This document shows positions 1 through 12,111 of a stretch of DNA of 64,000 nucleotides, in pieces. The stretch's first letter is position 1. Every line of letters begins with the position of its first letter. Where the stretch lies: IMG/VR virus record IMGVR_UViG_3300020477_000990, positions 1-64,000 of that record. One strand, written 5' to 3'. The notes beneath the pieces were generated by a model. It saw only the letters and a list, made by a program, of their open reading frames with translations. It was not told the DNA's origin and did no database searches. The translations under genes and the position numbers were made by a program.

Positions 1-76
1 GGGGGATTAGCTCAGCTGGGAGAGCGCCTGATTTGCATTCAGGAGGTCAGCGGTTCGATCCCGCTATCCTCCACCA
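1..76 (+). tRNA. tRNA-Ala(TGC)
   Basis: Cloverleaf: acceptor GGGGGAT/ATCCTCC with G3:U70, anticodon arm CCTGA-TTTGCAT-TCAGG, GGTTCGATCC T-arm, encoded CCA. Confidence 0.97.
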
Positions 77-124
77 ATTTAAATATAAGTTATTCGAAAA
101 ATCAACAAGTTAAATATAATAGTA

Positions 125-1333
125 ATGAAACATATTAGAAAACAATTTCCGATATTTAATAAAAAACTACCTAGTGGAAAGACGCTAGTGTACTTTGATA
201 GTGCTAATTCTTCACAAAAACCACAAAGAGTAATTGATCGAATGAATACGTTTTTAACAGAAGAGTATTCTAGTGTTGGTAGAAGTATACATGAATTGTC
301 TAATAGTGCAACAAAGGCGGTTGAAGATAGTAGACAAGCAGTTGCTAAATTTATTAATGCTAGAGAACCAGATGAAATTGTTTTTACAAAATCAGCCACA
401 GAAGCAATTAATATGATATCAACGTCATATGGTAGAACAATGCAACCAGGTGATGAAATAATTACAACAGAAGTAGAACATCATTCAAATTATATTCCGT
501 GGCATTTACAACGTAAGTTTAATGGAGCAGTTATTAAGTTTCTTAAATTAAATAATGAGCATCAAATTAATATTGATGAGCTAGAATCATTAATTACAGA
601 CCGTACTAAAATAATTGCAATTACACATTTATCAAATACTACAGGGCAAACAATAGACGTTAAACGTGTTTGTGAAATTGCTCATGCAAAAGGTATAGTT
701 GTATCAGTTGATGGAACACAAGGTGCTCCACATATGAAAGTTAATGTACAAGATATTGATTGCGATTTTTATGTAATGAGTGGTCATAAAATGTATGCAC
801 CAAGTGGTATTGGAGTAATGTATGCTAAACGTAAATGGATTGATGAATTAGATCCAGCATTAGGTGGTGGTGGAATGATTACAAATGTTGATCATGATAC
901 TGTTGACTTTGCAGAAGGTTCTAAAAAATGGGAAGCTGGAACGTTAGCAGTAACTGAAATTGTTGGCTTACATGAAGCATTAAATTTTTATGTAGATACA
1001 GGTTTTGATGAAATGGTTAAGCATGAAGAAGAATTAATTAATTATGCTTATGAAAAAATGTCAGAAATAGATGGAATGCAGTTTATTGGAACAAAAAAAC
1101 GTAGTGCTGTTATTTCGTTTAATATTGATGGAATACATCATCAAGATATGGCTATGTTTTTAGATGCTTATGGAATAGCAACTCGTCCAGGGCACCATTG
1201 TACACAAATGCTACATAGACAAATAGGATGGACAGGATCTTGTAGAATATCTACAGGAGTGTACAATACAAAAGAGGAAGTTGATTATTTTCTAACTTGT
1301 TTAAATGAAATTAAAGGCAGGTTTGGCAAATAA
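125..1333 (+). CDS. sufS: Cysteine desulfurase, SufS class
   Basis: YFDSANSSQKP, PLP-lysine SGHKMYAPSGIG, catalytic RPGHHC. Confidence 0.93.
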   Translation: MKHIRKQFPIFNKKLPSGKTLVYFDSANSSQKPQRVIDRMNTFLTEEYSSVGRSIHELSNSATKAVEDSRQAVAKFINAREPDEIVFTKSATEAINMISTSYGRTMQPGDEIITTEVEHHSNYIPWHLQRKFNGAVIKFLKLNNEHQINIDELESLITDRTKIIAITHLSNTTGQTIDVKRVCEIAHAKGIVVSVDGTQGAPHMKVNVQDIDCDFYVMSGHKMYAPSGIGVMYAKRKWIDELDPALGGGGMITNVDHDTVDFAEGSKKWEAGTLAVTEIVGLHEALNFYVDTGFDEMVKHEEELINYAYEKMSEIDGMQFIGTKKRSAVISFNIDGIHHQDMAMFLDAYGIATRPGHHCTQMLHRQIGWTGSCRISTGVYNTKEEVDYFLTCLNEIKGRFGK

Positions 1334-1345
1334 ATATTAATATAG

Positions 1346-1420
1346 GCGGGTGTAGCTCAGTGGTAGAGCGTCTCGTTGCCAACGAGAAGGTCATGGGTTC
1401 GAACCCCATTACCCGCTCCA
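1346..1420 (+). tRNA. tRNA-Gly(GCC)
   Basis: GCGGGTG/TACCCGC acceptor, TCTCG-TTGCCAA-CGAGA anticodon arm, TTCGAA T-loop, TCCA end. Confidence 0.97.
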
Positions 1421-1422
1421 TG

Positions 1423-1430
1423 TATAAATA
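1423..1430 (+). promoter_or_regulatory. T4-type late promoter TATAAATA
   Basis: Exact TATAAATA upstream of ORF 1449. Confidence 0.55.
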
Positions 1431-1448
1431 AATAAAAAGAAAGAAAAA

Positions 1449-2105
1449 ATGAAAACAGAAAAAATAGAACAGTTTTTAAAGAAGGTAGAATCAGAAGTTT
1501 ATTCTGAACCAGATTCACCTATGCATACACAAATGATAGATATGGTTGTTAAAGATCTTTTAGAAAATCAATTAAAAGAAACAGATAAACAAATTCGTAT
1601 TTTAGATATAGGTTGTGGCCAAGGATATGCATTAATAAAATTTAAAGAAGCTGGGTTTGAAAACTTGCAAGGAATAACAATGAGCAAAGAAGATGTTGAT
1701 AAAACTATTGAAAGAGGATTTAAATGTGAAAACATGGATCAGTCTTTTATGACATTTGATGATAATAGTTTTGATTTTATGTTTTCAAGACATTGTTTAG
1801 AACATTCACCATTTCCATATTTAACATTAATAGAATATTTTAGAGTGTGCAAACCAAATGGTAGAATTTATATAGAAATGCCTGCCCCTAATAATCATCG
1901 TCCATTAGAAAGAATAGCAAATCATTATTCAATTATGGATACTAAAATGTGGGGTGCATTAATGATGAGAGTAGGTTGGCAAGTTTTAGTTGCTAACCAT
2001 TTTACTATTAAATTAACTGACAACAACAATCCTGATAAACCGTTTGACGAAAAGAATTTAGTTTTCGTTTTACAAAAACCAACCAATGAACAATCAACCA
2101 AATAA
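1449..2105 (+). CDS. Class I SAM-dependent methyltransferase
   Basis: ILDIGCGQG motif I; FDDNSFDF...HCLEH; RVCKPNG. Confidence 0.88.
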   Translation: MKTEKIEQFLKKVESEVYSEPDSPMHTQMIDMVVKDLLENQLKETDKQIRILDIGCGQGYALIKFKEAGFENLQGITMSKEDVDKTIERGFKCENMDQSFMTFDDNSFDFMFSRHCLEHSPFPYLTLIEYFRVCKPNGRIYIEMPAPNNHRPLERIANHYSIMDTKMWGALMMRVGWQVLVANHFTIKLTDNNNPDKPFDEKNLVFVLQKPTNEQSTK

Positions 2106-2120
2106 TAATTGGAGATAATA

Positions 2121-3179
2121 ATGATCAAAATAGATACAATTTCTCAAGAAGGATATGAGAAAGTAATACGTATAACTGAACCAGAAAGTGGATTAAATTG
2201 TGTTATTGCATTATGTGATTATTTAAAAACAAAACACATTGCTTTATGTAGTATTAAAGTAGAAGAATATACATCAGATAATTTGCATTTAGATAGAACA
2301 TTAAGATATGCTAATAGTGTAGCTAAAAAACTATCGTATGCAGGATTACCTTACACTGGTGGTTCAATAACAATCAATAAAAGTTCAATTAAAAGTGAAA
2401 GAGAAGCATTAAACCAATTGTCTACTTTTTTAACAACAAATTTAAAAGATGAGTTAGTAGCCTTTGTAGAATATGGTCTTGAAGAATTAGCATTAGATCA
2501 TTTATGTAAAAATTGTGATAGTGTTATACAAATTGATAGTGATTTGTATTTTAAAGCACAGGCAAAAGGTGCATACTATTCTATACGAGCTTTACAACAA
2601 TTTCAAAGTGGAAATAAAAATTTAAAATATAAACATATTGTAATAGACGGAGTCGGACCATTAGGTTCAGAGTTAGCACAATTACTTGATCGTGCAGGAG
2701 CAAATATTACTGTTTGTGATAATGACGAACAAAATATAAACGATTTATATGCTCATATGCATTTTGGTAAATGTACAGTTGAAGAAGCTCCTTCAGTTCC
2801 AGGTGATGTATATGTTTTATGTAGTAGTCCAGAAAAATTAGATAAGAAGTCTACATATGAAATTAAGTCGTCAAGAATTGTAGGTGTAACTGATGCACAA
2901 TTATCTAGTAACAAAGCAGGATATAATTTACATAGTAAAGATATTATATATGTTCCTGAGTTTGTTGCAGGAGTTGGTGGGTTAGTTGCTATTGCAAAAC
3001 AACAATCAAAAGTTAAAAAAACTTTAGACAAAGAGTTAGATACTATTTTTACTAGAACATTGTCGTTATTAAACCATAGTTCAAAAAATAGAAAGCCACC
3101 ATTTATTGTAGCTGAACAACAAATGACAGATAAATCACCAACTAAACAGGCCAAACAACCAGAAACAATAACAATATGA
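2121..3179 (+). CDS. Glu/Leu/Phe/Val dehydrogenase homologue, catalytic motifs degenerate
   Basis: GYEKV...ESGLNCVIAL N-terminus, DGVGPLG Rossmann motif, IIYVPEFVAGVGG; GGAG at 2111 supports ATG 2121. Confidence 0.75.
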   Translation: MIKIDTISQEGYEKVIRITEPESGLNCVIALCDYLKTKHIALCSIKVEEYTSDNLHLDRTLRYANSVAKKLSYAGLPYTGGSITINKSSIKSEREALNQLSTFLTTNLKDELVAFVEYGLEELALDHLCKNCDSVIQIDSDLYFKAQAKGAYYSIRALQQFQSGNKNLKYKHIVIDGVGPLGSELAQLLDRAGANITVCDNDEQNINDLYAHMHFGKCTVEEAPSVPGDVYVLCSSPEKLDKKSTYEIKSSRIVGVTDAQLSSNKAGYNLHSKDIIYVPEFVAGVGGLVAIAKQQSKVKKTLDKELDTIFTRTLSLLNHSSKNRKPPFIVAEQQMTDKSPTKQAKQPETITI

Positions 3180-3376
3180 CAGATTTAGTATTAACCAATA
3201 TTCTTTACTCATTGCGAGTATTGTTAGTTGGTGGAATATTAGTTAGAGTGTTTATGTATTTTGGCCAGAAATATAAATTAAAATATGAGCATAATTATTG
3301 GATTTCTGTATTTCTAATGAGTCAAATAACTTTTTGGATAGATTATATCCTATTTTCGCAACTTTTAACTCGATAA
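3176..3376 (+). CDS. Small membrane protein
   Basis: Two hydrophobic segments; ATGA overlap with upstream gene. Confidence 0.55.
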   Translation: MTDLVLTNILYSLRVLLVGGILVRVFMYFGQKYKLKYEHNYWISVFLMSQITFWIDYILFSQLLTR

Positions 3377-3378
3377 AG

Positions 3379-3420
3379 ATTAGTCTTTTTGGTTGACAAA
3401 AGACTAATAGATGTTATATT
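3379..3420 (+). promoter_or_regulatory. Sigma70-type promoter overlapped by an 11-bp inverted repeat
   Basis: TTGACA 3393-3398, TGnTATATT to 3420; ATTAGTCTTTT (3379-3389) / AAAAGACTAAT (3398-3408). Confidence 0.7.
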
Positions 3421-3426
3421 AATATT

Positions 3427-3873
3427 ATGACTATGCATTTAGAACGTGGCTTAACCACTCTGAATACAAAGAAGCGAAAGACTAAACCCAAGAAAATTGA
3501 GTATTATATGAAAGGGTTTAAAGAACAAAATAAGTTCTTAAAAAGTAAAGGTTTAGTACAAATGACCATGCAAGAATATATTGATTACAGACGTGGCAAG
3601 TTTAAGTCACCCGTTACTACAAATAGGAGTGTAGTGTCAACGGTTAGCACGTCGGTCTCCAAAACCGAAAGTGAGGGTTCGAATCCTTCCACTTCTGCCA
3701 AACCAGAACCTAAATTGAGTAACAAAATAGGCGGTGGTGCTACAAGAAATTGGCGTGAAGAAAAAGAAAGATTAGAAGTAAGTAGAAAATATTCAATTGT
3801 ACCTGCTTATAATAAAGGACCATATATGGTTGTATCAAAAGACGATTTAAAAACAGCAGGTAGAAAAGTATGA
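3427..3873 (+). CDS. Basic phage protein with C-terminal PAYNKGxY motif; contains tRNA-Trp internally
   Basis: Uninterrupted 148-codon ORF directly after a promoter; its stop overlaps the next ATG. Confidence 0.72.
   Translation: MTMHLERGLTTLNTKKRKTKPKKIEYYMKGFKEQNKFLKSKGLVQMTMQEYIDYRRGKFKSPVTTNRSVVSTVSTSVSKTESEGSNPSTSAKPEPKLSNKIGGGATRNWREEKERLEVSRKYSIVPAYNKGPYMVVSKDDLKTAGRKV
3625..3700 (+). tRNA. tRNA-Trp(CCA), nested in CDS 3427..3873
   Basis: AGGAGTG/CACTTCT acceptor, GTGT/GCAC D-stem, TCGGT-CTCCAAA-ACCGA, GAGGG-TTCGAAT-CCTTC, G73, encoded CCA. Confidence 0.93.
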
Positions 3874-4774: not shown

Positions 4775-5108
4775 AAAATTAGATATGAAAGCAGTAAAGA
4801 AAGAACTGGATGAAATGTTTGATAATTATAAACCAAATCAAAAAATAAAAAAAGAACCAGAAGTTATAGATTTGGTTGAACAAGTAGCAAGGGCAAATCA
4901 AAAAGAACGTGATGCATTTACTAGAGGATTAGTTGCAAAATGGCCTTTGTTAGCAAAACAAATTATGGATAGCATACAAGTTGAAATTTTTGAAGCACGA
5001 ATTAAAGAAGAGCAAGAAACTTTAGAACGTATTTCAGAAGAAGCACGTAAAGAGGATGAACCTCTAATATTAACAAAAGAAATGGAAGTAGGTAAAAATG
5101 GAAATTAA
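4767..5108 (+). CDS. Hypothetical protein
   Basis: ORF coupled to pepA. Confidence 0.6.
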   Translation: MVKKLDMKAVKKELDEMFDNYKPNQKIKKEPEVIDLVEQVARANQKERDAFTRGLVAKWPLLAKQIMDSIQVEIFEARIKEEQETLERISEEARKEDEPLILTKEMEVGKNGN

Positions 5109-6597
5109 ATTTATCGACGATATGGCAGGTAGTGGTGAAAGCAATTGCGAAGTACACTTCTTGTATAAAATTAAAGATGATATACAACTATCACAACCAT
5201 CAGCAATATTAGATGAAGGCACAGATGGATTATTAAGTGAAACATTAAACAATAATAAATTTAAAGGAAAGTTTTTAGATAGTTTCTTTATAACATCAAA
5301 TAATTTGCCTTGCCATGATGCATTGTTTATATGTGTTGGTGATCCTAATGAATTAACAGAAAGCAAAAATGAAAAAATTGGTGGAGCAATTTATAGTAAA
5401 TTGCAAGAACGTGGCACACAAGGAAAAGTATTAATTTTTATTGATGATAAAATGAAAGGTCATCCTGCAACAAATATTGGGTTTGGTATGCAGTTAAAAG
5501 AATATAAGTTTGACAAATATTTTACTAAAAAAGATAAAGAAAAAACAGACTTTGAAGTAGTTGTTTGTCGCGACGGTGTTGCATCTACAACATTAGAAAA
5601 AGAATTTATAGATAAACAAGCAATGGCTGATAGTATTGCCTTTACTAAAGATTTAATTTCTGAACCATCAAATGTATTGTATCCTAAATCATATGCTGAT
5701 AGAGTTAACGATTTAGAAAAATTTGGAATAAAAGTTACAGTATATGGTGAAAAAGAATTAAAAAAAATAGGTGCAGATGCATTATTGGCAGTTGGACAAG
5801 GTAGTGAAAGAGAATCACAAATGGTAGTAATGGAATGGCAAGGTGGTAAAAAATCTGAAAAACCTGTAGCATTTGTTGGTAAAGGAGTTTGCTTTGATAC
5901 TGGTGGGTATTCAATTAAGCCATCTAAAGGTTTAAAAGACATGAAATATGATATGGGTGGATCAGCAGTAGTTGTTGGTACTATGATGAGTATTGCAAAA
6001 CGTAATTTACCTATTAATGCAGTTGGAGTTATTGGATTAGTTGAAAATATGGTGTCTAGTACAGCATATAAGCCAGGTGATGTTATTAATTCTATGAGTG
6101 GGCAAACAATTGAAATTGATAATACAGATGCAGAAGGTAGAGTAGTATTAGCAGATTGTTTATGGTACACACAAGATAAGTTTAAACCAAAAACAATGAT
6201 TAATTTAGCAACATTAACAGGAGCAATATCAATTGCACTTGGTGATCAACTTGCTGGTATATTTTCAAATAATGATGAATTAAGTAATCAATTAATTGAT
6301 GCTGGGCATCAAGTAGATGAAAAAGTTTGGCGTTTACCATGCGATCCAATAGGAGAAAGATATGACAAGTATGTTGATTCAACTATTGCAGATATGCATA
6401 ATGTAGGTAAAGGTGGTGAAGCAAGTTCAACAACAGCGGCACAATTTTTGCAAAGGTTTGTTAATGATACTCCATGGACACATATTGATATAGCTGGAGT
6501 TACTTGGAATGATAAAGGATCTATGACAGCATCTGGTGGTGCAACTGGTTGGGGAGTTAAGCTCTTAAACAAATGGGTAGATAACCTTGATGGTTAA
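5098..6597 (+). CDS. pepA: Leucyl aminopeptidase (M17)
   Basis: VGKGVCFDTGG, MKYDMGG, NTDAEGR, ATLTGA, HIDIAG. Confidence 0.95.
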   Translation: MEIKFIDDMAGSGESNCEVHFLYKIKDDIQLSQPSAILDEGTDGLLSETLNNNKFKGKFLDSFFITSNNLPCHDALFICVGDPNELTESKNEKIGGAIYSKLQERGTQGKVLIFIDDKMKGHPATNIGFGMQLKEYKFDKYFTKKDKEKTDFEVVVCRDGVASTTLEKEFIDKQAMADSIAFTKDLISEPSNVLYPKSYADRVNDLEKFGIKVTVYGEKELKKIGADALLAVGQGSERESQMVVMEWQGGKKSEKPVAFVGKGVCFDTGGYSIKPSKGLKDMKYDMGGSAVVVGTMMSIAKRNLPINAVGVIGLVENMVSSTAYKPGDVINSMSGQTIEIDNTDAEGRVVLADCLWYTQDKFKPKTMINLATLTGAISIALGDQLAGIFSNNDELSNQLIDAGHQVDEKVWRLPCDPIGERYDKYVDSTIADMHNVGKGGEASSTTAAQFLQRFVNDTPWTHIDIAGVTWNDKGSMTASGGATGWGVKLLNKWVDNLDG

Positions 6598-6856
6598 GCA
6601 AGAAACAATATCACGTCAAGAGCTTAATGAATTAAAAGAATTAATTCAAGAAGAAGCATTAATAACTAGAAGGACAATAGTGAAAACATCACAAAAAACA
6701 GACCCACAAAGTTTAAGGCGTAAAGTTTCTGAAGTAGAACGAAAACAAAAACAGGAACAATATATGCGTAAAAAATATCCAGCAGTTAATGAAGCATATA
6801 AAAATTATCAAGAAGCATTTAAGTATTATAAAATGATAATGAGAACTGTAAAATAG
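6587..6856 (+). CDS. Hypothetical helical protein, paralogue of next ORF
   Basis: Shares SLRRK...EQYMRxxYPxVNEAYKxYQ with 6860..7093. Confidence 0.65.
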   Translation: MMVKQETISRQELNELKELIQEEALITRRTIVKTSQKTDPQSLRRKVSEVERKQKQEQYMRKKYPAVNEAYKNYQEAFKYYKMIMRTVK

Positions 6857-6859
6857 AGT

Positions 6860-7093
6860 ATGGACAAAGAAAAAGATTTAGCACATGAGTTTGAAAATAT
6901 GAGACAAGAATTAATGAAGCACCACGATACAGAATACGGAAATGAAATAGAAGTTCATTCTTTAAGACGTAAGCTCTTAAAACAAGAGCAAAAAATGAAG
7001 CATGAGCAATATATGAGAAGACGTTATCCGTCAGTAAATGAAGCATATAAGCAGTATCAAATGCTCCTAAAATTAACAAAATCGCATAAGTAA
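6860..7093 (+). CDS. Hypothetical helical protein, paralogue of previous ORF
   Basis: Same shared motif. Confidence 0.65.
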   Translation: MDKEKDLAHEFENMRQELMKHHDTEYGNEIEVHSLRRKLLKQEQKMKHEQYMRRRYPSVNEAYKQYQMLLKLTKSHK

Positions 7094-7107
7094 ATTGATA
7101 AATAAAT

Positions 7108-7133
7108 ACTGAAGAGCAGACTTCAGTTTATTT
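7108..7133 (+). terminator. Hairpin in hfq leader, possible terminator
   Basis: ACTGAAG/CTTCAGT stem followed by TTATTT. Confidence 0.35.
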
Positions 7134-7143
7134 AGGTATAACT

Positions 7144-7350
7144 ATGAACGAAAATGAAACAAATTTTATAAAAAAATTAATAGACAAAAATGCACAGGTG
7201 ACAATTTTTCTAATTAATGGTGTTAAACTAACTGGAGAAATTACCGCTGTGGATCAAAATACATTAAATTTGAAACGTGAAAAACATACTCAATTGGTAT
7301 ATAAAAACGCGATTTCAACTATAATGCCCCTAGAACCCCTAGAAATTTAA
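7144..7350 (+). CDS. hfq: RNA chaperone Hfq, divergent
   Basis: Sm1 VTIFLINGVKLTG and Sm2 QLVYKNAISTIMP. Confidence 0.9.
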   Translation: MNENETNFIKKLIDKNAQVTIFLINGVKLTGEITAVDQNTLNLKREKHTQLVYKNAISTIMPLEPLEI

Positions 7351-7351
7351 T

Positions 7352-7359
7352 TATAAATA
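7352..7359 (+). promoter_or_regulatory. T4-type late promoter TATAAATA
   Basis: Exact match directly before the non-coding structured region. Confidence 0.6.
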
Positions 7360-7363
7360 CTAT

Positions 7364-7575
7364 TGATATAGATGAGTAAGGAAACTTATGAAGGGACTGG
7401 AAAGGTTTTCCTATTTTAGAGCCCGACTATATAAGGTGTGTCATATCTCGCCTATTGACTGAACATATGGCCGGGTGAATATACCGTTGGGTAACACCAG
7501 AGAATTATTCTAACGGAACCCTGTAGAAGAAGGATATATTTTAGGCCAAAGTATAGCTGGGCATTGCAGGGTTTA
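7364..7575 (+). ncRNA. Putative structured ncRNA (~210 nt), family unrecognised
   Basis: No ORF, GC-richer than flanks, several nested stems (7376-7389 GAAA hairpin, 7421-7476, 7484-7516, 7517-7573). Confidence 0.6.
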
Positions 7576-7585
7576 GTGATTTTAA

Positions 7586-7614
7586 TTGACTTTTTATGAA
7601 AAAAATATTAAAAT
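7586..7614 (+). promoter_or_regulatory. Sigma70-type promoter
   Basis: TTGACT-N17-TAAAAT. Confidence 0.5.
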
Positions 7615-7636
7615 AAAACATAATAAGGAGAAATAT

Positions 7637-7819
7637 ATGAGTACAACAAATCAACAACTTTTAACTTTATTTGATGAATACAAAGAAAACAATGATAAGT
7701 TTGCAGAAAAAGGTAATAAAGCCGCAGGTACTAGAGCTAGAAAAGCCTTATCTGAAATGACAAAGTTAGCTAAAGTGAGAAGAAAAGAAATCCAAGAAGC
7801 AAAAACTGTAACGGCATAA
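7637..7819 (+). CDS. Small basic histone H1/Hc1-like nucleoid protein
   Basis: GNKAAGTRARKAL...RKEIQ; AAGGAG RBS before ATG 7637. Confidence 0.7.
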   Translation: MSTTNQQLLTLFDEYKENNDKFAEKGNKAAGTRARKALSEMTKLAKVRRKEIQEAKTVTA

Positions 7820-7823
7820 TTAA

Positions 7824-8366
7824 ATGGAAACTTCGAACGACAAGTACGAAATTATAAGAACGGTGTGGCGTTCTGGTCGCAAGAATGATTTTGGAGATGA
7901 ATTGGTTGTTACACAAGGTAATGTTAATTTAAAGTTAGCATATATTATGGCATGGGAAGTAAATGAAAATAGACCCGAGTGTGTTTGCTGGAATGGCACC
8001 GTAGCATACTTTCCACGTATGTTTTGGTTAGACAGCATTCCAAAAAATTTTATTAAAGTTTATAACCACTCTGAAGAGAAACATTACTTAATTGAAAAGG
8101 ATAAACATTATACTATAAATGAAGATGGCATTTATGTGAAGTATAATAAAGAAGAAGGTACAGATGTGTATCAACCACAATTTATAAATGTAACTAAAAA
8201 CCCATCAGCATTAACACAGGCAATAGAATATGTGCTTTGGTTTAATGAAAATCAACGTCAACTTGACACTTATAATAGGTTATTAAGTACGTCAAAACAA
8301 GCAAGAAAACGTAGAAGAAATAGAGCTTCTAAAACGGTTGAAAAACAGATAAATACTACATTATGA
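7824..8366 (+). CDS. Hypothetical protein
   Basis: 180-aa ORF in operon. Confidence 0.65.
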   Translation: METSNDKYEIIRTVWRSGRKNDFGDELVVTQGNVNLKLAYIMAWEVNENRPECVCWNGTVAYFPRMFWLDSIPKNFIKVYNHSEEKHYLIEKDKHYTINEDGIYVKYNKEEGTDVYQPQFINVTKNPSALTQAIEYVLWFNENQRQLDTYNRLLSTSKQARKRRRNRASKTVEKQINTTL

Positions 8367-8686
8367 TAACACTTACAGATTCAGCAAAACAACAGATTAT
8401 AGATTTGTGTAAGCAAAATGAAGTAGATGCAGTTAAGCTATCAGTAGAAGGTGGCGGATGTGCAGGCTTTAAGTATGACTGGGGATTTACTAGTAATGAT
8501 AAAATTGCATCAGATGATGAAGTTTTTGAATTAACAGAAGGTAAATTTGTAGTAGATGGTATGAGTGTGATGTATATTGCAGGTACAGAAATAGATTATG
8601 TACGTGAAGTATTTGGTTCACATTTTGAAATTAGAAATCCATCAGCATCATCGTCATGTGGCTGTGGTGAAAGCTTCGGAGTCTAA
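8363..8686 (+). CDS. iscA: A-type Fe-S carrier (IscA/HesB family)
   Basis: GGGCAGFKY and CGCGESF. Confidence 0.92.
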   Translation: MITLTDSAKQQIIDLCKQNEVDAVKLSVEGGGCAGFKYDWGFTSNDKIASDDEVFELTEGKFVVDGMSVMYIAGTEIDYVREVFGSHFEIRNPSASSSCGCGESFGV

Positions 8687-8687
8687 T

Positions 8688-8927
8688 ATGTCTGACATTA
8701 AAAATGTTTTTGAACGTCCTGATCTAGATGATGAAAGTTTAGTACAACTAGTTAGAAGTATTCAACAAAAATTGGCTTACATTGAAAAGACAGGTGGTTA
8801 TACATCAGCTCATGAGCAAATGAGAAGACAGTTAGATTTTTTACTAATAGAATTAAATACTCGTCAAAATAAAAAAGAAAGTGATGTAGTATTAAATGAA
8901 AAGCCATTTATAATTGGTGAGGAGTAA
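8688..8927 (+). CDS. Hypothetical protein
   Basis: ATG just after the iscA stop. Confidence 0.55.
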   Translation: MSDIKNVFERPDLDDESLVQLVRSIQQKLAYIEKTGGYTSAHEQMRRQLDFLLIELNTRQNKKESDVVLNEKPFIIGEE

Positions 8928-8931
8928 CTTT

Positions 8932-9111
8932 ATGTCAATGAATTTAAATGAACAAAAATTAAAAAGAGAATATGAATATTTAAAAGATAAAGTTGAAGAA
9001 GCAGAAAAAGTAAGAGACTTAAGAAGAGGACCTAATAGTTGGAAAAAATTAAGAACACTTAAAAAATTAAAATTAAATATAAAAGATAGGTTAGCACAAT
9101 TAGAAAGATAA
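8932..9111 (+). CDS. Small coiled-coil protein (DUF465-like)
   Basis: GAGGAG RBS; LKKLKLNIKDRL C-terminus. Confidence 0.55.
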   Translation: MSMNLNEQKLKREYEYLKDKVEEAEKVRDLRRGPNSWKKLRTLKKLKLNIKDRLAQLER

Positions 9112-9112
9112 A

Positions 9113-9532
9113 ATGGGTAAAAAACCAAAGTCGAATACAAAAACGTCATATACATCTAAAGGTGGCCTTGGCGGAAGAGTAGGACGCAAAACCCGTAACA
9201 TGATGAGACGTGCAAGACGTTCAGGTGAATTAACAGATGAATCAGTTATGAGAGGTTGGGTAGCTAGAGAAAAATATTGGAAAGAGTTATCAACAAGACG
9301 TGATCAAAAATCAAAAGATAGATATGCCAAATGGGCAGAGGAAGAAAAAATTAAATTAGAGGCTAGTAAATTACATAGAACATATAAGCCTGCAGGTTGT
9401 ACTTATGGCGCCTGTGTTCAAGCATTGAAAACTAATTATTTGTCACAATTTACAGAAAAGTGGAATAAACAATTAGGCGAAACTTCAGGCGGAAATATAC
9501 ATTATGGAAGACAGCGAAGACGACCTTCATAG
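9113..9532 (+). CDS. Basic hypothetical protein
   Basis: ORF in operon. Confidence 0.6.
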   Translation: MGKKPKSNTKTSYTSKGGLGGRVGRKTRNMMRRARRSGELTDESVMRGWVAREKYWKELSTRRDQKSKDRYAKWAEEEKIKLEASKLHRTYKPAGCTYGACVQALKTNYLSQFTEKWNKQLGETSGGNIHYGRQRRRPS

Positions 9533-9761
9533 TCAGCCGCGGGAAAGTCTTTCTGAGAAAGTCGTTCTTCCCCCGGCCAAGCTAAAAAAGAGAGTCAATT
9601 ACATTCTCCAAAAATTAATAATTGAGCATTCACCCAAAGAAGTTGTTGATTATCTATTTGACTTTATTAACCAAAATTATAAAGGTGATAAAAGAATAGA
9701 TGTAGCACTTAAAGAATTTTTAGAAAAACAAGAAAACAATAAAGACATTGACAATTCCTAG
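9504..9761 (+). CDS. Hypothetical protein
   Basis: ORF in operon. Confidence 0.5.
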   Translation: MEDSEDDLHSQPRESLSEKVVLPPAKLKKRVNYILQKLIIEHSPKEVVDYLFDFINQNYKGDKRIDVALKEFLEKQENNKDIDNS

Positions 9762-9776
9762 AATTTAATATATAAT
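9748..9776 (+). promoter_or_regulatory. Sigma70-type early promoter
   Basis: TTGACA-N17-TATAAT. Confidence 0.8.
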
Positions 9777-9785
9777 TTGGTTATA

Positions 9786-10325
9786 ATGATTGATACTGGA
9801 AGAATTACAAATATAAATGAATATGGTGAACCGGTTGTTAATTGTAATGACCTAGTTGAATTAATATATCAAGGTAAAACAATAGACAATTTAAAAGTAA
9901 ATGATAAGCGAATTGACTTATATAATACTGTAATTTCTGATTTAAATATTGATTGGCCAGAAATTAAAAAATTATCTAAGATAGATATTTCTGTAAAAGA
10001 TTATGATACTGCTCTACAATCAGATTGGTATATGCCAGATGAATATAAAAAACTTGATGTAGTATCACATATAAAATCATTAGCAAAATCAGATGAAGAG
10101 ATAAAAAGAGTTGACACAGAGCTTGAATTATATGTAAAATATGATTTGTTAAATGTATTAAGATTTTTAGTATATTTAATTAAAATAATGAGAGATAATA
10201 ATATTGTATGGGGAGTTGGAAGAGGATCATCAGTTTCATCATATGTATTATATTTGATAGGAATTCATAAAGTAAATTCTATTAAATATGGCTTAGATAT
10301 AGGTGAATTTTTAAAAGATAAATAA
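9786..10325 (+). CDS. Stand-alone fragment of DNA polymerase III alpha (DnaE)
   Basis: RVDTELEL...WGVGRGSSVSSYVLYLIGIHKV...EFL matches the DnaE GRGS region; no DxD catalytic motif. Confidence 0.8.
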   Translation: MIDTGRITNINEYGEPVVNCNDLVELIYQGKTIDNLKVNDKRIDLYNTVISDLNIDWPEIKKLSKIDISVKDYDTALQSDWYMPDEYKKLDVVSHIKSLAKSDEEIKRVDTELELYVKYDLLNVLRFLVYLIKIMRDNNIVWGVGRGSSVSSYVLYLIGIHKVNSIKYGLDIGEFLKDK

Positions 10326-10343
10326 TTATATAGGAGTTTTATT

Positions 10344-10721
10344 ATGGCAACTAGAAGAACAAATCAAGGTCAAACTTTAGATATGGAAGGTCTTGCTTTA
10401 AGAAATGAAAAAGCTGTAGCAGTAGGAAATATGAATACTAATGCTAGAGGCGATAAACTTGATGCAGATGGTAATATAGTTAAAACTAAAACTGAACAAG
10501 CACAGGCTTATTATGCAAATAATCCAAAAGCAGTTGTGAAAACAGTTAGTATTAAAGATGCTATTGATCCAGTTCAAACTAAAAAAATGGAAAGTGCACC
10601 AGTACAAAAAGCAAAACCAAAAGCACCTAAGGCAAAACCAGCACCAGCACAAAAGGTAAAGAAAACTGTTGAAGTTGAATTACCAAATGGTGATATTGAA
10701 CTTAGAGAAATAGAAGAATAA
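10344..10721 (+). CDS. Hypothetical late protein
   Basis: GATAAATA at 10317, AGGAG RBS; AVGNMNTNARGD. Confidence 0.7.
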   Translation: MATRRTNQGQTLDMEGLALRNEKAVAVGNMNTNARGDKLDADGNIVKTKTEQAQAYYANNPKAVVKTVSIKDAIDPVQTKKMESAPVQKAKPKAPKAKPAPAQKVKKTVEVELPNGDIELREIEE

Positions 10722-10723
10722 AA

Positions 10724-11104
10724 ATGGCTCACAGAATATATGGGAAAATAATACCCATAAAAGAAAAAATATTGGTAAAACATATTGATAAGGGCGAAAG
10801 AAAAACAGCAGGTGGACTTATTCTACCATCTAGCGATGAAGTTGCAGATGGTGGGTCAGGAGTAAGACCTCGCTGGGCTCAAGTTTATGCAGTTGGTCCG
10901 AAAGTAGATTATTTACATGAAGGCCAATGGGTTTTAATGGATCATGGACGTTGGACAAATTCAATAGAACTTGATGACGGAAACGAAGTTTTTGATTTAA
11001 GGATTTGCGATGCAGACGGAATTCTTGGAGTTCAGGACGAAAAACCTTCAGGAATTGTTTCAGTAGGAATTGAAAATCCTGGCCACGGCCCACACACAAT
11101 TTAA
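10724..11104 (+). CDS. groES: GroES-like co-chaperonin
   Basis: P..EKILVK...KTAGGLILP...VYAVGP. Confidence 0.82.
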   Translation: MAHRIYGKIIPIKEKILVKHIDKGERKTAGGLILPSSDEVADGGSGVRPRWAQVYAVGPKVDYLHEGQWVLMDHGRWTNSIELDDGNEVFDLRICDADGILGVQDEKPSGIVSVGIENPGHGPHTI

Positions 11105-11108
11105 TCAT

Positions 11109-11137
11109 TTGACAAAACATCATTTATATACTATACT
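11109..11137 (+). promoter_or_regulatory. Sigma70-type early promoter
   Basis: TTGACA-N17-TATACT. Confidence 0.75.
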
Positions 11138-11184
11138 ATACGTTGTATGCGTAAGCTCTGGAATATATTAATAGGCGGGAAATA

Positions 11185-12111
11185 ATGAAAGAATTATGGG
11201 TAGAAAAGTATAGACCTAAAAAAGTAAAGGAATATGTTTTTCGCGATGAAAAACAGGAACGACAAGTTCAAAGTTGGATTGATTCAAAAGCAATACCTCA
11301 TTTAATGTTTAGTGGTGATCCTGGTACAGGTAAAACTACTTTAGCAAAATTGTTGTTGCATGAACTTGAAGTTGATAGAGGTGATATATTAGAAATAAAT
11401 GCATCTAATGAAAATAGTGTAGATGTAATGCGTGAAAAGATTACAAACTTTTCACAAACAATGCCATTTGGTGATTTTAAATATGTATTGTTAGATGAAG
11501 CAGATTATATTACACCAAACGGACAAGCAATATTGCGTGGACTTATGGAACAGTTTGCGTCAACGTGTAGATTCATATTAACTTGTAATTGGGAAAGAAG
11601 AATTATTCCAGCAATTCATTCAAGATGTCAAGGCTTTCATATAAAACAATTAGATAAAACAATGTTTTCAGTAAGAGCAGGCGAAGTTATGGCAAATGAA
11701 GGTGTTGAGTTTGATATGGATACATTAGACATATATGTTAAAGCAAATTATCCAGATTTAAGAAAATGTATTAATACTTGTCAGATGAATTCACAAACAG
11801 GTAAGTTAGAAAAACCTGAAGATGGTGATCTTACAGAAGGTAATTTAGAAATCACTTATGTAGCAATGTTTCAAAATGGTGACATTGAAAAAGCTAGAAA
11901 ATATATAGTTGAAAATGCAGATCAAAATCAGTATGATAATATATATAGAAAGATGTATGAGAACTTAGAATGGTTCGGAGATACACAAGAAAAACAAAAT
12001 AGAGCATTATTGGCAATTCGTGAAGGACTAGTAAATCACGCAGTTGTAGTAGATCCAGAGATTAATTTAGCGGCAACTATGGTCGAATTAGAAGTAATTC
12101 GAAATAAATAG
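11185..12111 (+). CDS. Clamp loader AAA+ subunit (RFC small/gp44-like)
   Basis: WVEKYRP, GDPGTGKT, LDEAD, SRC. Confidence 0.93.
   Translation: MKELWVEKYRPKKVKEYVFRDEKQERQVQSWIDSKAIPHLMFSGDPGTGKTTLAKLLLHELEVDRGDILEINASNENSVDVMREKITNFSQTMPFGDFKYVLLDEADYITPNGQAILRGLMEQFASTCRFILTCNWERRIIPAIHSRCQGFHIKQLDKTMFSVRAGEVMANEGVEFDMDTLDIYVKANYPDLRKCINTCQMNSQTGKLEKPEDGDLTEGNLEITYVAMFQNGDIEKARKYIVENADQNQYDNIYRKMYENLEWFGDTQEKQNRALLAIREGLVNHAVVVDPEINLAATMVELEVIRNK

What the first reader, a model, noticed from the sequence alone, without database searches (positions are those of the whole stretch)
7144..7350. Phage Hfq with proximal face and rim remodelled, distal face kept
By manual alignment to E. coli Hfq: FDQF becomes VDQN (F39, F42 lost), YKHA becomes YKNA (H57 lost), the Q8/D9 region is altered and rim arginines are absent. 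Distal-face residues (aromatic 25, N28, G29, K31, Q52) remain. Established: the proximal face and rim bind sRNA U-tails and drive annealing. Inference: either a dominant-negative subunit that disables host sRNA control, or a chaperone specialised for phage RNAs such as the adjacent ncRNA.
Basis: partly seen in the sequence, partly recalled or inferred. Interest (0 to 1): 0.62.

Follow-up and report, generated by a model that had tools for sequence, protein, structure and literature searches.

The report
Host-type Hfq in marine jumbo phage
A 328-kb marine phage carries a real, conserved copy of the bacterial RNA-binding protein Hfq that lacks the usual uridine pocket and arginine rim, but the nearest bacterial Hfqs (streamlined marine alphaproteobacteria) lack them too, so the odd surface looks inherited, not a phage invention to sabotage its host.

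Summary
ORF 7144-7350 (+) encodes a 68-aa Hfq (Pfam E 3.6e-19) with a confident Sm fold. Against E. coli Hfq it has Q8E, R16I, R17D, R19N, F39V, F42N and H57N. The distal residues F25, N28, G29, V30, K31, Q52, S60 and T61 are kept.

The gene is conserved in syntenic marine phage contigs (PepA, Hfq, structured RNA, Hc1) and is under purifying selection (dN/dS 0.05-0.22).

The closest cellular Hfqs (up to 59% identity) are the single chromosomal Hfqs, lying between trkA and mazG, of a 0.9-1.6 Mb, ~30% GC marine alphaproteobacterial order whose relatives NCBI labels 'OCS116 cluster'. They share E8, I16, D17, a non-aromatic residue at 39, N42 and T43, and some have N57. Phage and OCS116 Hfqs group together even when these columns are removed. 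Loss of F42 also recurs in gut RF32 alphaproteobacteria and in other phage Hfqs.

Best reading: a host-derived Hfq that keeps only the A-rich-RNA (distal) binding mode and supplements the host-type protein during infection. The dominant-negative reading is unlikely. A dedicated partnership with the adjacent conserved structured RNA is untested. The host is not proven.

The parts
7144..7350 (+). hfq: 68-aa Hfq homologue with the Sm core only and no C-terminal tail. The proximal uridine pocket and rim arginine patch are replaced; the distal face is kept.
   Evidence: It is conserved at 68-100% identity in 28 90%-identity clusters. dN/dS is 0.05-0.22.
7108..7127 (+). Terminator-like hairpin (7 pairs followed by TTATTT) between the upstream small ORF and hfq. 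The sequence is not conserved in related loci.
7351..7585 (+). Conserved structured intergenic RNA (hfq 3' UTR or separate ncRNA). It has hairpin 7399-7411 with loop GGU, a weaker mid helix, and a long bipartite hairpin 7513-7577 followed by UUUAGUGAUUUU.
   Evidence: A 250-300 nt gap is present at this place in every related locus. The 3' hairpin has 19 pairs, 7 with compensatory changes and 100% paired cells; 0 of 500 shuffles reach this and slid controls collapse. Hairpin 1 covaries. There is no Rfam match. It is single-copy in the 328-kb genome.
7586..7614 (+). Sigma-70-type promoter TTGACT-17-TAAAAT (TACAAT in relatives) for the downstream Hc1 gene.
   Evidence: It is invariant across loci in alignment A2.
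7637..7819 (+). Histone H1-like Hc1 gene, the conserved downstream neighbour. It is context only and not shown to work with Hfq.
   Evidence: Pfam PF07432 at E 4.1e-18. Synteny is shown.

Best explanation
This is a genuine, functional Hfq gene that a clade of marine jumbo phages acquired from an alphaproteobacterial lineage whose own Hfq had already lost the proximal uridine / 3'-end pocket and the rim arginine patch. It most likely assembles into the usual Sm ring. It most likely binds single-stranded A-rich (ARN-type) RNA on its intact distal face, and it cannot hold sRNA U-tails or catalyse sRNA-mRNA annealing as E. coli Hfq does. In the infected cell it would add to, or replace, the host's own like-surfaced Hfq while host expression fails, acting on A-rich mRNA leaders or tails in this 31% GC system to protect RNA or control translation. 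Shown here: homology, fold, residue states, conservation, purifying selection, shared states with cellular relatives, and grouping with them. Inferred: ring assembly, distal-face A-rich RNA binding, loss of U-tail binding and annealing, direction of transfer, and the role in infection.
For: Identity as Hfq rests, and on an AF2 model with pLDDT 95.9 and alpha1-beta1..beta5 topology.

The gene is conserved. There are 28 clusters at 68-100% identity on marine contigs up to 324-328 kb, with the fixed gene order PepA, small ORF, Hfq, gap, Hc1, IscA. dN/dS is 0.05-0.22.

Within the clade the invariant residues are the distal and core ones (F22, N25, G26, K28, Q50, S58, T59), Y53-K54-N55 and D14. The former pocket positions 39, 41 and 42 vary freely.

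The roles of the lost and kept residues are taken from the literature. F42 is the stacking platform, Q8/Q41/K56 read the base, and H57 binds the 3'-OH. Y25/Q52/S60/T61 form the distal adenine site (PMC4152361). A triple mutant lacking the rim arginines is inactive in annealing, and even R16K is impaired (PMC3753642).

The trait appears inherited. The best cellular match among 401 alphaproteobacterial species is G416 at 59% identity. G416 is 1.4 Mb with 29% local GC, and its Hfq is the single copy next to trkA. Its relatives are labelled OCS116 cluster or Rhodobiaceae bacterium. They share E8, I16, D17, non-aromatic 39, N42 and T43, and some have N57. A second Hfq type in that order shares N28, A-M at 38-39 and the KRD loop with the phage.

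In the tree, phage and OCS116 Hfqs are sisters at 94/78. With the 11 trait columns removed, phage plus OCS116 plus one representative has SH-aLRT 96.
Against: The host is not identified. Identity to OCS116-order Hfqs is at most 59%, so the transfer is old or came from an unsampled relative.

The alignment has only 60-72 columns. The exact phage+OCS116 clade is merely not rejected (AU p 0.41). Convergence in AT-rich streamlined genomes is possible, because loss of F42 also arose in gut RF32 alphaproteobacteria.

The phage PepA and Hc1 genes show no special link to G416.

H57N is invariant in the phage clade but only occasional in OCS116 Hfqs. N28 and the KRDKH loop are more canonical in the phage. 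The phage protein is therefore not simply a copy of the host protein.

Confidence: 0.55

Rival explanations
1. Dominant-negative subunit: the phage protein co-assembles with the host's Hfq and poisons its proximal face and rim, shutting down host sRNA control.
For: The strands that form the ring interface (QLVYK-AISTIMP) are nearly identical to those of alphaproteobacterial Hfqs. A modelled 3+3 ring of phage Hfq with the G416 Hfq gave weak support. The score was 0.55 against a best control of 0.01. That mark was reached by 51 of 78 solved complexes and 2 of 108 mismatched pairs. At 0.60 or under, however, it was reached by only 5 of those 78 solved complexes and by all 4 mismatches that passed. 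The runs agree in at least 89% of contacts and the partner pLDDT is at least 77. The pass may simply reflect memory of solved Hfq rings.
Against: The nearest cellular Hfqs already lack the same residues, so in such a host there is nothing to poison. The trait groups by descent with those cells. The distal face is under strict purifying selection, which a mere poison subunit would not need. Other phages also carry Hfqs without F42, as do many cellular genomes.
Confidence: 0.1
2. Dedicated RNP: the phage Hfq is specialised to bind, stabilise or present the conserved structured RNA encoded directly downstream (7351-7585), or other phage RNAs.
For: The hfq-RNA adjacency is kept in every related locus over 68-100% protein identity. 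The RNA has covarying helices. It is single-copy in the genome and was not found in the G416 genome. In the closest phages an A-G-rich stretch (AGAAGAAGG or AAAAGAAGG) lies in the internal loop of the 3' hairpin.
Against: Adjacency alone is weak evidence. The A-rich stretch is not conserved in the more distant loci (L012, L005, L014). The element could equally be the hfq 3' UTR and terminator, or an insulator ahead of the strong Hc1 promoter. OCS116-type cells have the same kind of Hfq without this RNA.
Confidence: 0.15
3. Protein-binding Hfq: as reported for cyanobacterial Hfq, the altered ring has largely left riboregulation and acts through a protein partner.
For: Cyanobacterial Hfq is a known structural homologue with altered RNA-binding properties that appears not to take part in riboregulation (PMC4152361, citing Boggild 2009). 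D14 (the R17 position) and N55 (the H57 position) are invariant in the phage clade, which suggests a selected new surface rather than plain decay.
Against: The protein scores far below the cut-off of the cyanobacterial Hfq-related model, 26.3 against 52 bits. The distal adenine-site residues are fully conserved, which points to RNA. No candidate partner was identified.
Confidence: 0.1
4. Decaying passenger gene without function.
For: Canonical pocket residues are lost and positions 39, 41 and 42 vary.
Against: dN/dS is 0.05-0.22. Of the 68 positions, 37 are invariant across phages whose synonymous sites are near saturation. The frame is intact and the same length (68 aa) in 27 of 28 clusters, and synteny is fixed.
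Confidence: 0.03

Closest known systems
Canonical alphaproteobacterial / E. coli Hfq (PF17209, TIGR02383; e.g. Caulobacter Hfq, PDB 6gwk)
   Same: The Sm fold is the same, identity is 46-60%, and the beta2 (TIFLINGVKL) and beta4-beta5 (QLVYK-AISTIMP) strands are identical or nearly so. The distal adenine-site residues are the same. The protein scores above the Pfam and TIGR02383 cut-offs.
   Different: It has no F42 stacking platform, no Q8 and no H57. F39 is replaced. The R16/R17/R19 patch reads I, D, N. There is no C-terminal tail. The gene lies in a phage genome and not beside hflX or trkA.
Single chromosomal Hfq of the streamlined marine alphaproteobacterial order labelled 'OCS116 cluster' (G416 and relatives, P0390-P0509)
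   Same: The derived states are the same: E8, I16, D17, non-aromatic 39, D40, variable 41, N42 and T43. Some members also have N57. The protein is short (72 aa) with no tail, and the genomes have ~29-31% GC, like the phage.
   Different: Identity is only 46-59%. OCS116 type A has S28, E33 and the loop KGTNNIQ, where the phage keeps N28 and KRDKHTQ. Most members keep H57. The gene is cellular and lies between trkA and mazG.
Cyanobacterial Hfq (Synechocystis / Anabaena; NF047718 Hfq_rel_Cyano)
   Same: It is also an Hfq-fold ring whose proximal RNA site is not conserved, with altered RNA binding.
   Different: It is not a close relative; the phage protein scores 26.3 bits against a 52-bit cut-off. 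The phage protein keeps a canonical distal face.
Gram-positive Hfqs with a weak rim patch (S. aureus KANQ, B. subtilis RKEN)
   Same: The arginine patch is reduced or absent, which is linked in the literature to a weak or absent sRNA matchmaker role (PMC3753642).
   Different: Those proteins keep the proximal aromatic residue and H57. The phage protein has lost both the patch and the pocket.
Other phage Sm/Hfq-like proteins (Pfam PF23874 Phage_Hfq; BFVD models such as Mycobacterium phage Tonenili 'Hfq-like domain')
   Same: They are small Sm-like folds encoded by phages.
   Different: Sequence identity is only 10-25%, and PF23874 scores 14.6 bits against a 24.2-bit cut-off. No PHROGs family matches. 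The present protein is a true Hfq orthologue-type sequence and not a remote Sm-like protein.

Membership tests
Hfq protein family (homology; Pfam PF17209 / NCBIfam TIGR02383) | Profile match above the curated cut-off | tested here: met
   PF17209 scores 68.6 bits against 27. TIGR02383 scores 64.8 against 61.7. The stricter NF001602 scores 67.2 against 95 and is not reached.
Hfq protein family (homology; Pfam PF17209 / NCBIfam TIGR02383) | Sm fold: an N-terminal helix followed by five bent beta strands | tested here: met
   AF2 model with mean pLDDT 95.9: H3-14, E18-23, E28-36, E40-45, E48-53, E57-62.
Hfq protein family (homology; Pfam PF17209 / NCBIfam TIGR02383) | Ring (hexamer) assembly through the beta4-beta5 strands | tested here: inconclusive
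   The interface strands are conserved. The modelled 3+3 ring with the G416 Hfq gave only weak support, 0.55 against a best control of 0.01, and may reflect memory of solved Hfq rings.
Canonical sRNA-matchmaker Hfq (E. coli type) | Proximal uridine pocket: Q8, Q41, F42, K56 | tested here: not met
   The residues are E, Q, N, K in the window. Across the clade they are E/Q at 8, Q/D/E/L at 41, N/H/E/T/S at 42 and K at 56. Roles are per PMC4152361.
Canonical sRNA-matchmaker Hfq (E. coli type) | H57 of the YKHAI motif, which recognises the RNA 3'-hydroxyl | tested here: not met
   N is invariant at this position in all 28 phage clusters.
Canonical sRNA-matchmaker Hfq (E. coli type) | Rim arginine patch R16/R17/R19, required for annealing | tested here: not met
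   The residues are I, D, N. D at 17 is invariant and I at 16 nearly so. The role is per PMC3753642.
Canonical sRNA-matchmaker Hfq (E. coli type) | Distal A-rich RNA site: aromatic 25, N28, G29, I30, K31, Q52, S60, T61 | tested here: met
   The residues are F, N, G, V, K, Q, S, T and are invariant in the clade apart from V/I at 30. Q33 is T or S.
Canonical sRNA-matchmaker Hfq (E. coli type) | RNA binding and annealing activity; complementation of an hfq mutant | not testable with these tools
   This needs biochemistry and genetics.
Cyanobacterial Hfq-related proteins (NF047718) | Profile match above the cut-off | tested here: not met
   26.3 bits against 52.
Phage_Hfq (Pfam PF23874) | Profile match above the cut-off | tested here: not met
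   14.6 bits against 24.2.

The most novel reading that the evidence does not exclude
Hfqs that keep only the distal face form an undescribed functional class. They have no uridine pocket, no H57 in some members, and an acidic or aliphatic rim. They are the sole Hfq of abundant streamlined alphaproteobacteria (marine OCS116-type, gut RF32) and have been captured repeatedly by phages. In this jumbo-phage clade the protein would have become the dedicated partner of the conserved structured RNA encoded next to it, or would retarget the host ring by mixing with it. That would be a phage-borne post-transcriptional control module working without sRNA U-tails.
Probability: 0.15. Interest if true: 0.7.

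Novelty: new variant of a known kind. Interest (0 to 1): 0.42.

Why it matters
Hfq is the model bacterial RNA chaperone, and its three RNA-binding surfaces are textbook knowledge. A true Hfq is rare in phages. PHROGs has no family for it, INPHARED gave five weak hits (at least two in bacterial genome records), and BFVD holds only remote Sm-like folds.

This example shows two things. First, large marine phages carry host-type post-transcriptional regulators alongside tRNAs, a histone-like protein and metabolic genes. Second, whole lineages of streamlined alphaproteobacteria, and several phage groups, run on an Hfq that lacks the surfaces thought essential for sRNA work.

That raises a testable question: what does an Hfq with only a distal face do? 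It also gives a possible host clue (OCS116-type bacteria) for an uncultured 328-kb phage group. Finally, it is a caution. A deviation from the E. coli reference is not a phage adaptation until host-lineage proteins have been checked.

Tried and rejected
- **Megablast of window 5000-12000 against INPHARED:** no match.
- **tblastn of the Hfq against INPHARED:** five weak hits at 40-46% identity. At least two lie in Salmonella enterica genome records held in the phage set.
- **The search for related loci with the single protein in IMG/VR:** nothing found. The alignment-based scan gave L018-L021.
- **Rfam, at gathering thresholds and at E<=10:** nothing in the hfq-hc1 spacer. The HrrF hit at 7028-7132 is chance (16.9 bits against 77).
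- **Covariance model R1 of the spacer RNA:** only the source copy in the 328-kb genome, plus one hit at E 0.35, and nothing in G416.
- **Host inference from other phage genes:** PepA is 45-55% identical to hundreds of alphaproteobacteria, with G416 not among the best. Hc1 was found in 1 of 401 alphaproteobacterial genomes and not in G416. Neither is informative.
- **First lead, G001 / L016:** this cellular Hfq with QHDEE and YKNA turned out to belong to a gut order; a relative is named Candidatus Scatocola faecigallinarum. I infer from memory that this is GTDB's RF32. It is not a plausible host of a marine phage, but it shows that loss of F42 recurs in cells.
- **Conserved GATAAATA motif upstream of hfq as a phage promoter:** its count in the window equals the chance expectation (7 against 7.08).
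- **Sigma-70 scan:** no + strand promoter directly upstream of hfq.
- **The look-up of sequencing runs:** No expression or transcript-end data were obtained, and no other route was tried.
- **Seven of 61 RF32 loci** could not be parsed by my motif script and are left out of the counts.

Full report
**What is there.** The window is the first 64 kb of a 328,149-bp IMG/VR virus record with direct terminal repeats and about 31% GC. All large ORFs in the first 30 kb are on the + strand. ORF 7144-7350 (+) encodes 68 residues. It matches Pfam Hfq (PF17209) at E 3.6e-19, 68.6 bits against a cut-off of 27. It just passes NCBI's Hfq equivalog model TIGR02383, at 64.8 against 61.7 bits. It matches 36 distinct solved Hfq chains, the best being Caulobacter Hfq 6gwk at E 2.9e-12. 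An AlphaFold2 model built on 55 sequences has mean pLDDT 95.9 and the Sm topology of one helix and five strands. It is the only Hfq in the phage genome.

**The observation.** I took E. coli Hfq from NC_000913.3 and aligned it with the phage protein and about 75 others. The alignment is gap-free from F11 to L46. It gives:
- Q8E, D9T, R16I, R17D and R19N on the helix and rim;
- F39V, F42N and H57N on the proximal face;
- D40, Q41, Y55 and K56 kept;
- distal Y25F, N28, G29, I30V, K31, Q52, S60 and T61 kept, with Q33T.

The literature assigns F42 as the base-stacking platform. Q8, with K56 and Q41, reads the base, and H57 contacts the 3'-hydroxyl. Y25/Q52/S60/T61 form the distal adenine pocket (PMC4152361). 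R16/R17/R19 form the annealing site: the triple mutant is inactive and even R16K is impaired (PMC3753642).

**It is a conserved, selected phage gene.** A search of 5.8 billion proteins found 28 clusters of 68-aa proteins (one of them 74 aa) at 68-100% identity. After these, identity drops to alphaproteobacterial Hfqs at 46-60%. The clusters come from Tara and other marine or estuarine metagenomes, on contigs up to 323,919 and 328,149 bp.
- Fourteen fetched loci show the same order: M17 aminopeptidase, one or two small ORFs, Hfq, a 250-300-nt gap, Hc1, a 180-aa ORF, IscA, and a DnaE fragment.
- Where dS is not saturated, pairwise dN/dS is 0.05-0.22.
- In the clade, 37 of 68 positions are invariant. 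These include all distal-face residues, Y53-K54-N55 and D14 (the R17 position). The former pocket positions vary: V/M/Y/S/A at 39, Q/D/E/L at 41 and N/H/E/T/S at 42.

**Do cellular Hfqs share the substitutions? Yes.** A pattern scan of one genome per GTDB species found two cellular YKNA Hfqs. Roseospirillum parvum is otherwise canonical. An alphaproteobacterial MAG, L016, reads QHDEES in place of SFDQFV.
- In L016 the gene is the only Hfq and sits in an hfq-hflX pair.
- Its order has genomes of 1.3-1.9 Mb. A relative is named Candidatus Scatocola faecigallinarum; from memory I take this to be the gut group RF32.
- Every one of the 61 genomes sampled from that order has one Hfq. Of the 54 I could read, only 17 keep an aromatic residue at 42, and 7 have also lost F39. 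Loss of the pocket is therefore recurrent in cells.

That order is not marine, so I searched 401 alphaproteobacterial species with the phage protein.
- The best full match is G416 (1.4 Mb, local GC 29%) at 59% identity.
- Its 72-aa Hfq lies next to trkA and reads FIKDLID...ITSSDSNTLTLK...YKHAISTILPV.
- Its relatives are abundant in Tara data. NCBI names two of them 'OCS116 cluster bacterium' and 'Rhodobiaceae bacterium'. OCS116 is an incertae sedis alphaproteobacterial clade.
- These proteins share E8, I/V16, D/N17, a mostly non-aromatic residue at 39, D40, a variable 41, N42 and T43 with the phage. Seven of the 120 listed also have N57.
- The order holds 25 species genomes of 0.9-1.6 Mb at 29-31% GC, close to the phage's 31%. 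A second Hfq type in it (…IIAMGKNSLLLKRDEN…) shares N28, A-M at 38-39 and the KRD loop with part of the phage clade. Both types lie between trkA and a convergent mazG, which argues for vertical descent in the cells.

**Phylogeny.**
- A careful ML tree (77 rows, 72 columns) puts the phage clade (97/78) and the OCS116 clade (100/100) as sisters at 94/78. They sit inside a wider group of Hfqs lacking F42 that also holds other viral Hfqs.
- After removing the 11 trait columns, phage plus OCS116 plus one metagenomic representative still form a starred set (SH-aLRT 96). The exact two-group clade is not rejected (AU p 0.41).
- The alignment is short and the OCS116 branch is long, so this is good but not conclusive evidence that the odd surface predates capture by the phage.
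- Identity of at most 59% means the donor was ancient or is unsampled.

**Other phages.** IMG/VR contigs of 38-124 kb encode Hfqs reading KHDQSC…YKDA. A 57-kb contig carries a YKNA Hfq without F42 beside SSB, ERF and YqaJ genes. Among the 149 nearest 50%-identity representatives, 61 of 155 Hfq domains lack an aromatic residue at 42. Seventeen lack that, H57 and a basic residue at 16 together. This sample is biased towards the query. PHROGs has no matching family. BFVD holds only remote Sm-like phage proteins at 25% identity or less. I found no paper on phage-encoded Hfq of this kind.

**Mechanism.** The residue pattern predicts a ring that can still bind A-rich single-stranded RNA on the distal face. 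It also predicts no capture of uridine-rich 3' ends and no catalysis of annealing. Because the most similar cellular proteins have the same pattern, the simplest role is supply of host-type Hfq activity during infection. This would resemble the phage's tRNAs, Hc1, IscS/IscA and PepA genes. That step is inferred.

The dominant-negative idea needs a host with a canonical Hfq, which the evidence does not favour. A modelled 3+3 ring of phage and G416 Hfq gave only weak support:
- The score was 0.55 against a best control of 0.01.
- The mark was reached by 51 of 78 solved complexes and 2 of 108 mismatched pairs.
- At 0.60 or under, it was reached by only 5 of those 78 solved complexes and by all 4 mismatches that passed.
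- The runs agree in at least 89% of contacts, and the partner pLDDT is at least 77.
- The pass may simply reflect memory of solved Hfq rings.

**The adjacent RNA.** The hfq-hc1 spacer contains three structural elements:
- a small hairpin (7399-7411) with a covarying stem and a GGU loop;
- a weaker long-range helix;
- a bipartite hairpin (7513-7577) of 19 pairs, 7 of them with compensatory changes.

For the bipartite hairpin all cells are paired, 0 of 500 shuffles reach the covariation score, and slid controls collapse. A sigma-70-type promoter, TTGACT-17-TAAAAT at 7586-7614, follows and serves Hc1. The RNA has no Rfam match. It is single-copy in the phage and was not found in G416. It is a real conserved structure. 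It could be an ncRNA, the hfq 3' UTR and terminator, or a ligand of the phage Hfq, and none of these was tested. Expression data could not be obtained.

**Verdict.** The 'phage-remodelled, dominant-negative' interpretation is not supported. The best reading is a host-derived Hfq variant that keeps only the distal face, carried by a marine jumbo-phage clade. The nearest cellular counterparts are in OCS116-type streamlined alphaproteobacteria.

Noticed in passing
window 7351-7585: Conserved structured RNA between hfq and hc1. It has three helices with compensatory changes, no Rfam family and a single copy in the 328-kb genome. Its class and function are unknown.
   Followed up: partly
window 7637-7819: Phage-encoded histone H1-like protein Hc1 (PF07432) behind a near-consensus sigma-70 promoter (7586-7614). 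A homologue was found in only 1 of 401 alphaproteobacterial genomes sampled, so its origin is unclear.
   Followed up: partly
window 6587-6856 and 6860-7093: Two adjacent small ORFs (89 and 77 aa) share a C-terminal motif, EQYMRKKYPAVNEAYKNYQ against EQYMRRRYPSVNEAYKQYQ. They look like tandem paralogues. They have no Pfam or PHROGs match. Related phages have one or two copies.
   Followed up: no
window 1-3700, 5098-6597, 8363-8686: A cluster of host-like genes lies near the genome end. It holds tRNA-Ala, tRNA-Gly and tRNA-Trp, an IscS-like class-V aminotransferase (125-1333), a methyltransferase, the M17 leucyl aminopeptidase PepA, and the IscA-type Fe-S carrier. PepA is 45-55% identical to many alphaproteobacteria.
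   Followed up: partly
window 9777-10325: A 182-aa ORF matches only the NTPase part of DNA polymerase III alpha (PF07733). It has the same size in related phages (179 aa), which suggests a split or fragmentary DnaE.
   Followed up: no
L016, L024-L083 (gut alphaproteobacterial order, probably RF32): In this order, 37 of 54 sole chromosomal Hfqs lack an aromatic residue at position 42, and 7 also lack F39. The rim residues grade from RKNK to KEGE. This is a stepwise natural series of proximal-face loss in cells.
   Followed up: partly
L019-L021 (IMG/VR contigs of 38-124 kb); L116:5001-5213: Independent viral Hfqs also lack F39, F42 and H57 (KHDQSC…YKDA; KFDEKC…YKNA). The one in L116 lies next to SSB, ERF and YqaJ recombination genes.
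   Followed up: partly
L085, L119-L129 (order of G416): The OCS116-labelled order has two divergent Hfq types at the same trkA-mazG locus. Type B has even lost D40 (…AMGKNS…). No HflX gene follows hfq there.
   Followed up: partly
P0124-P0130 and others: Many of the top-scoring metagenomic relatives are tandem double-Hfq proteins of 120-200 aa with two Sm domains.
   Followed up: no
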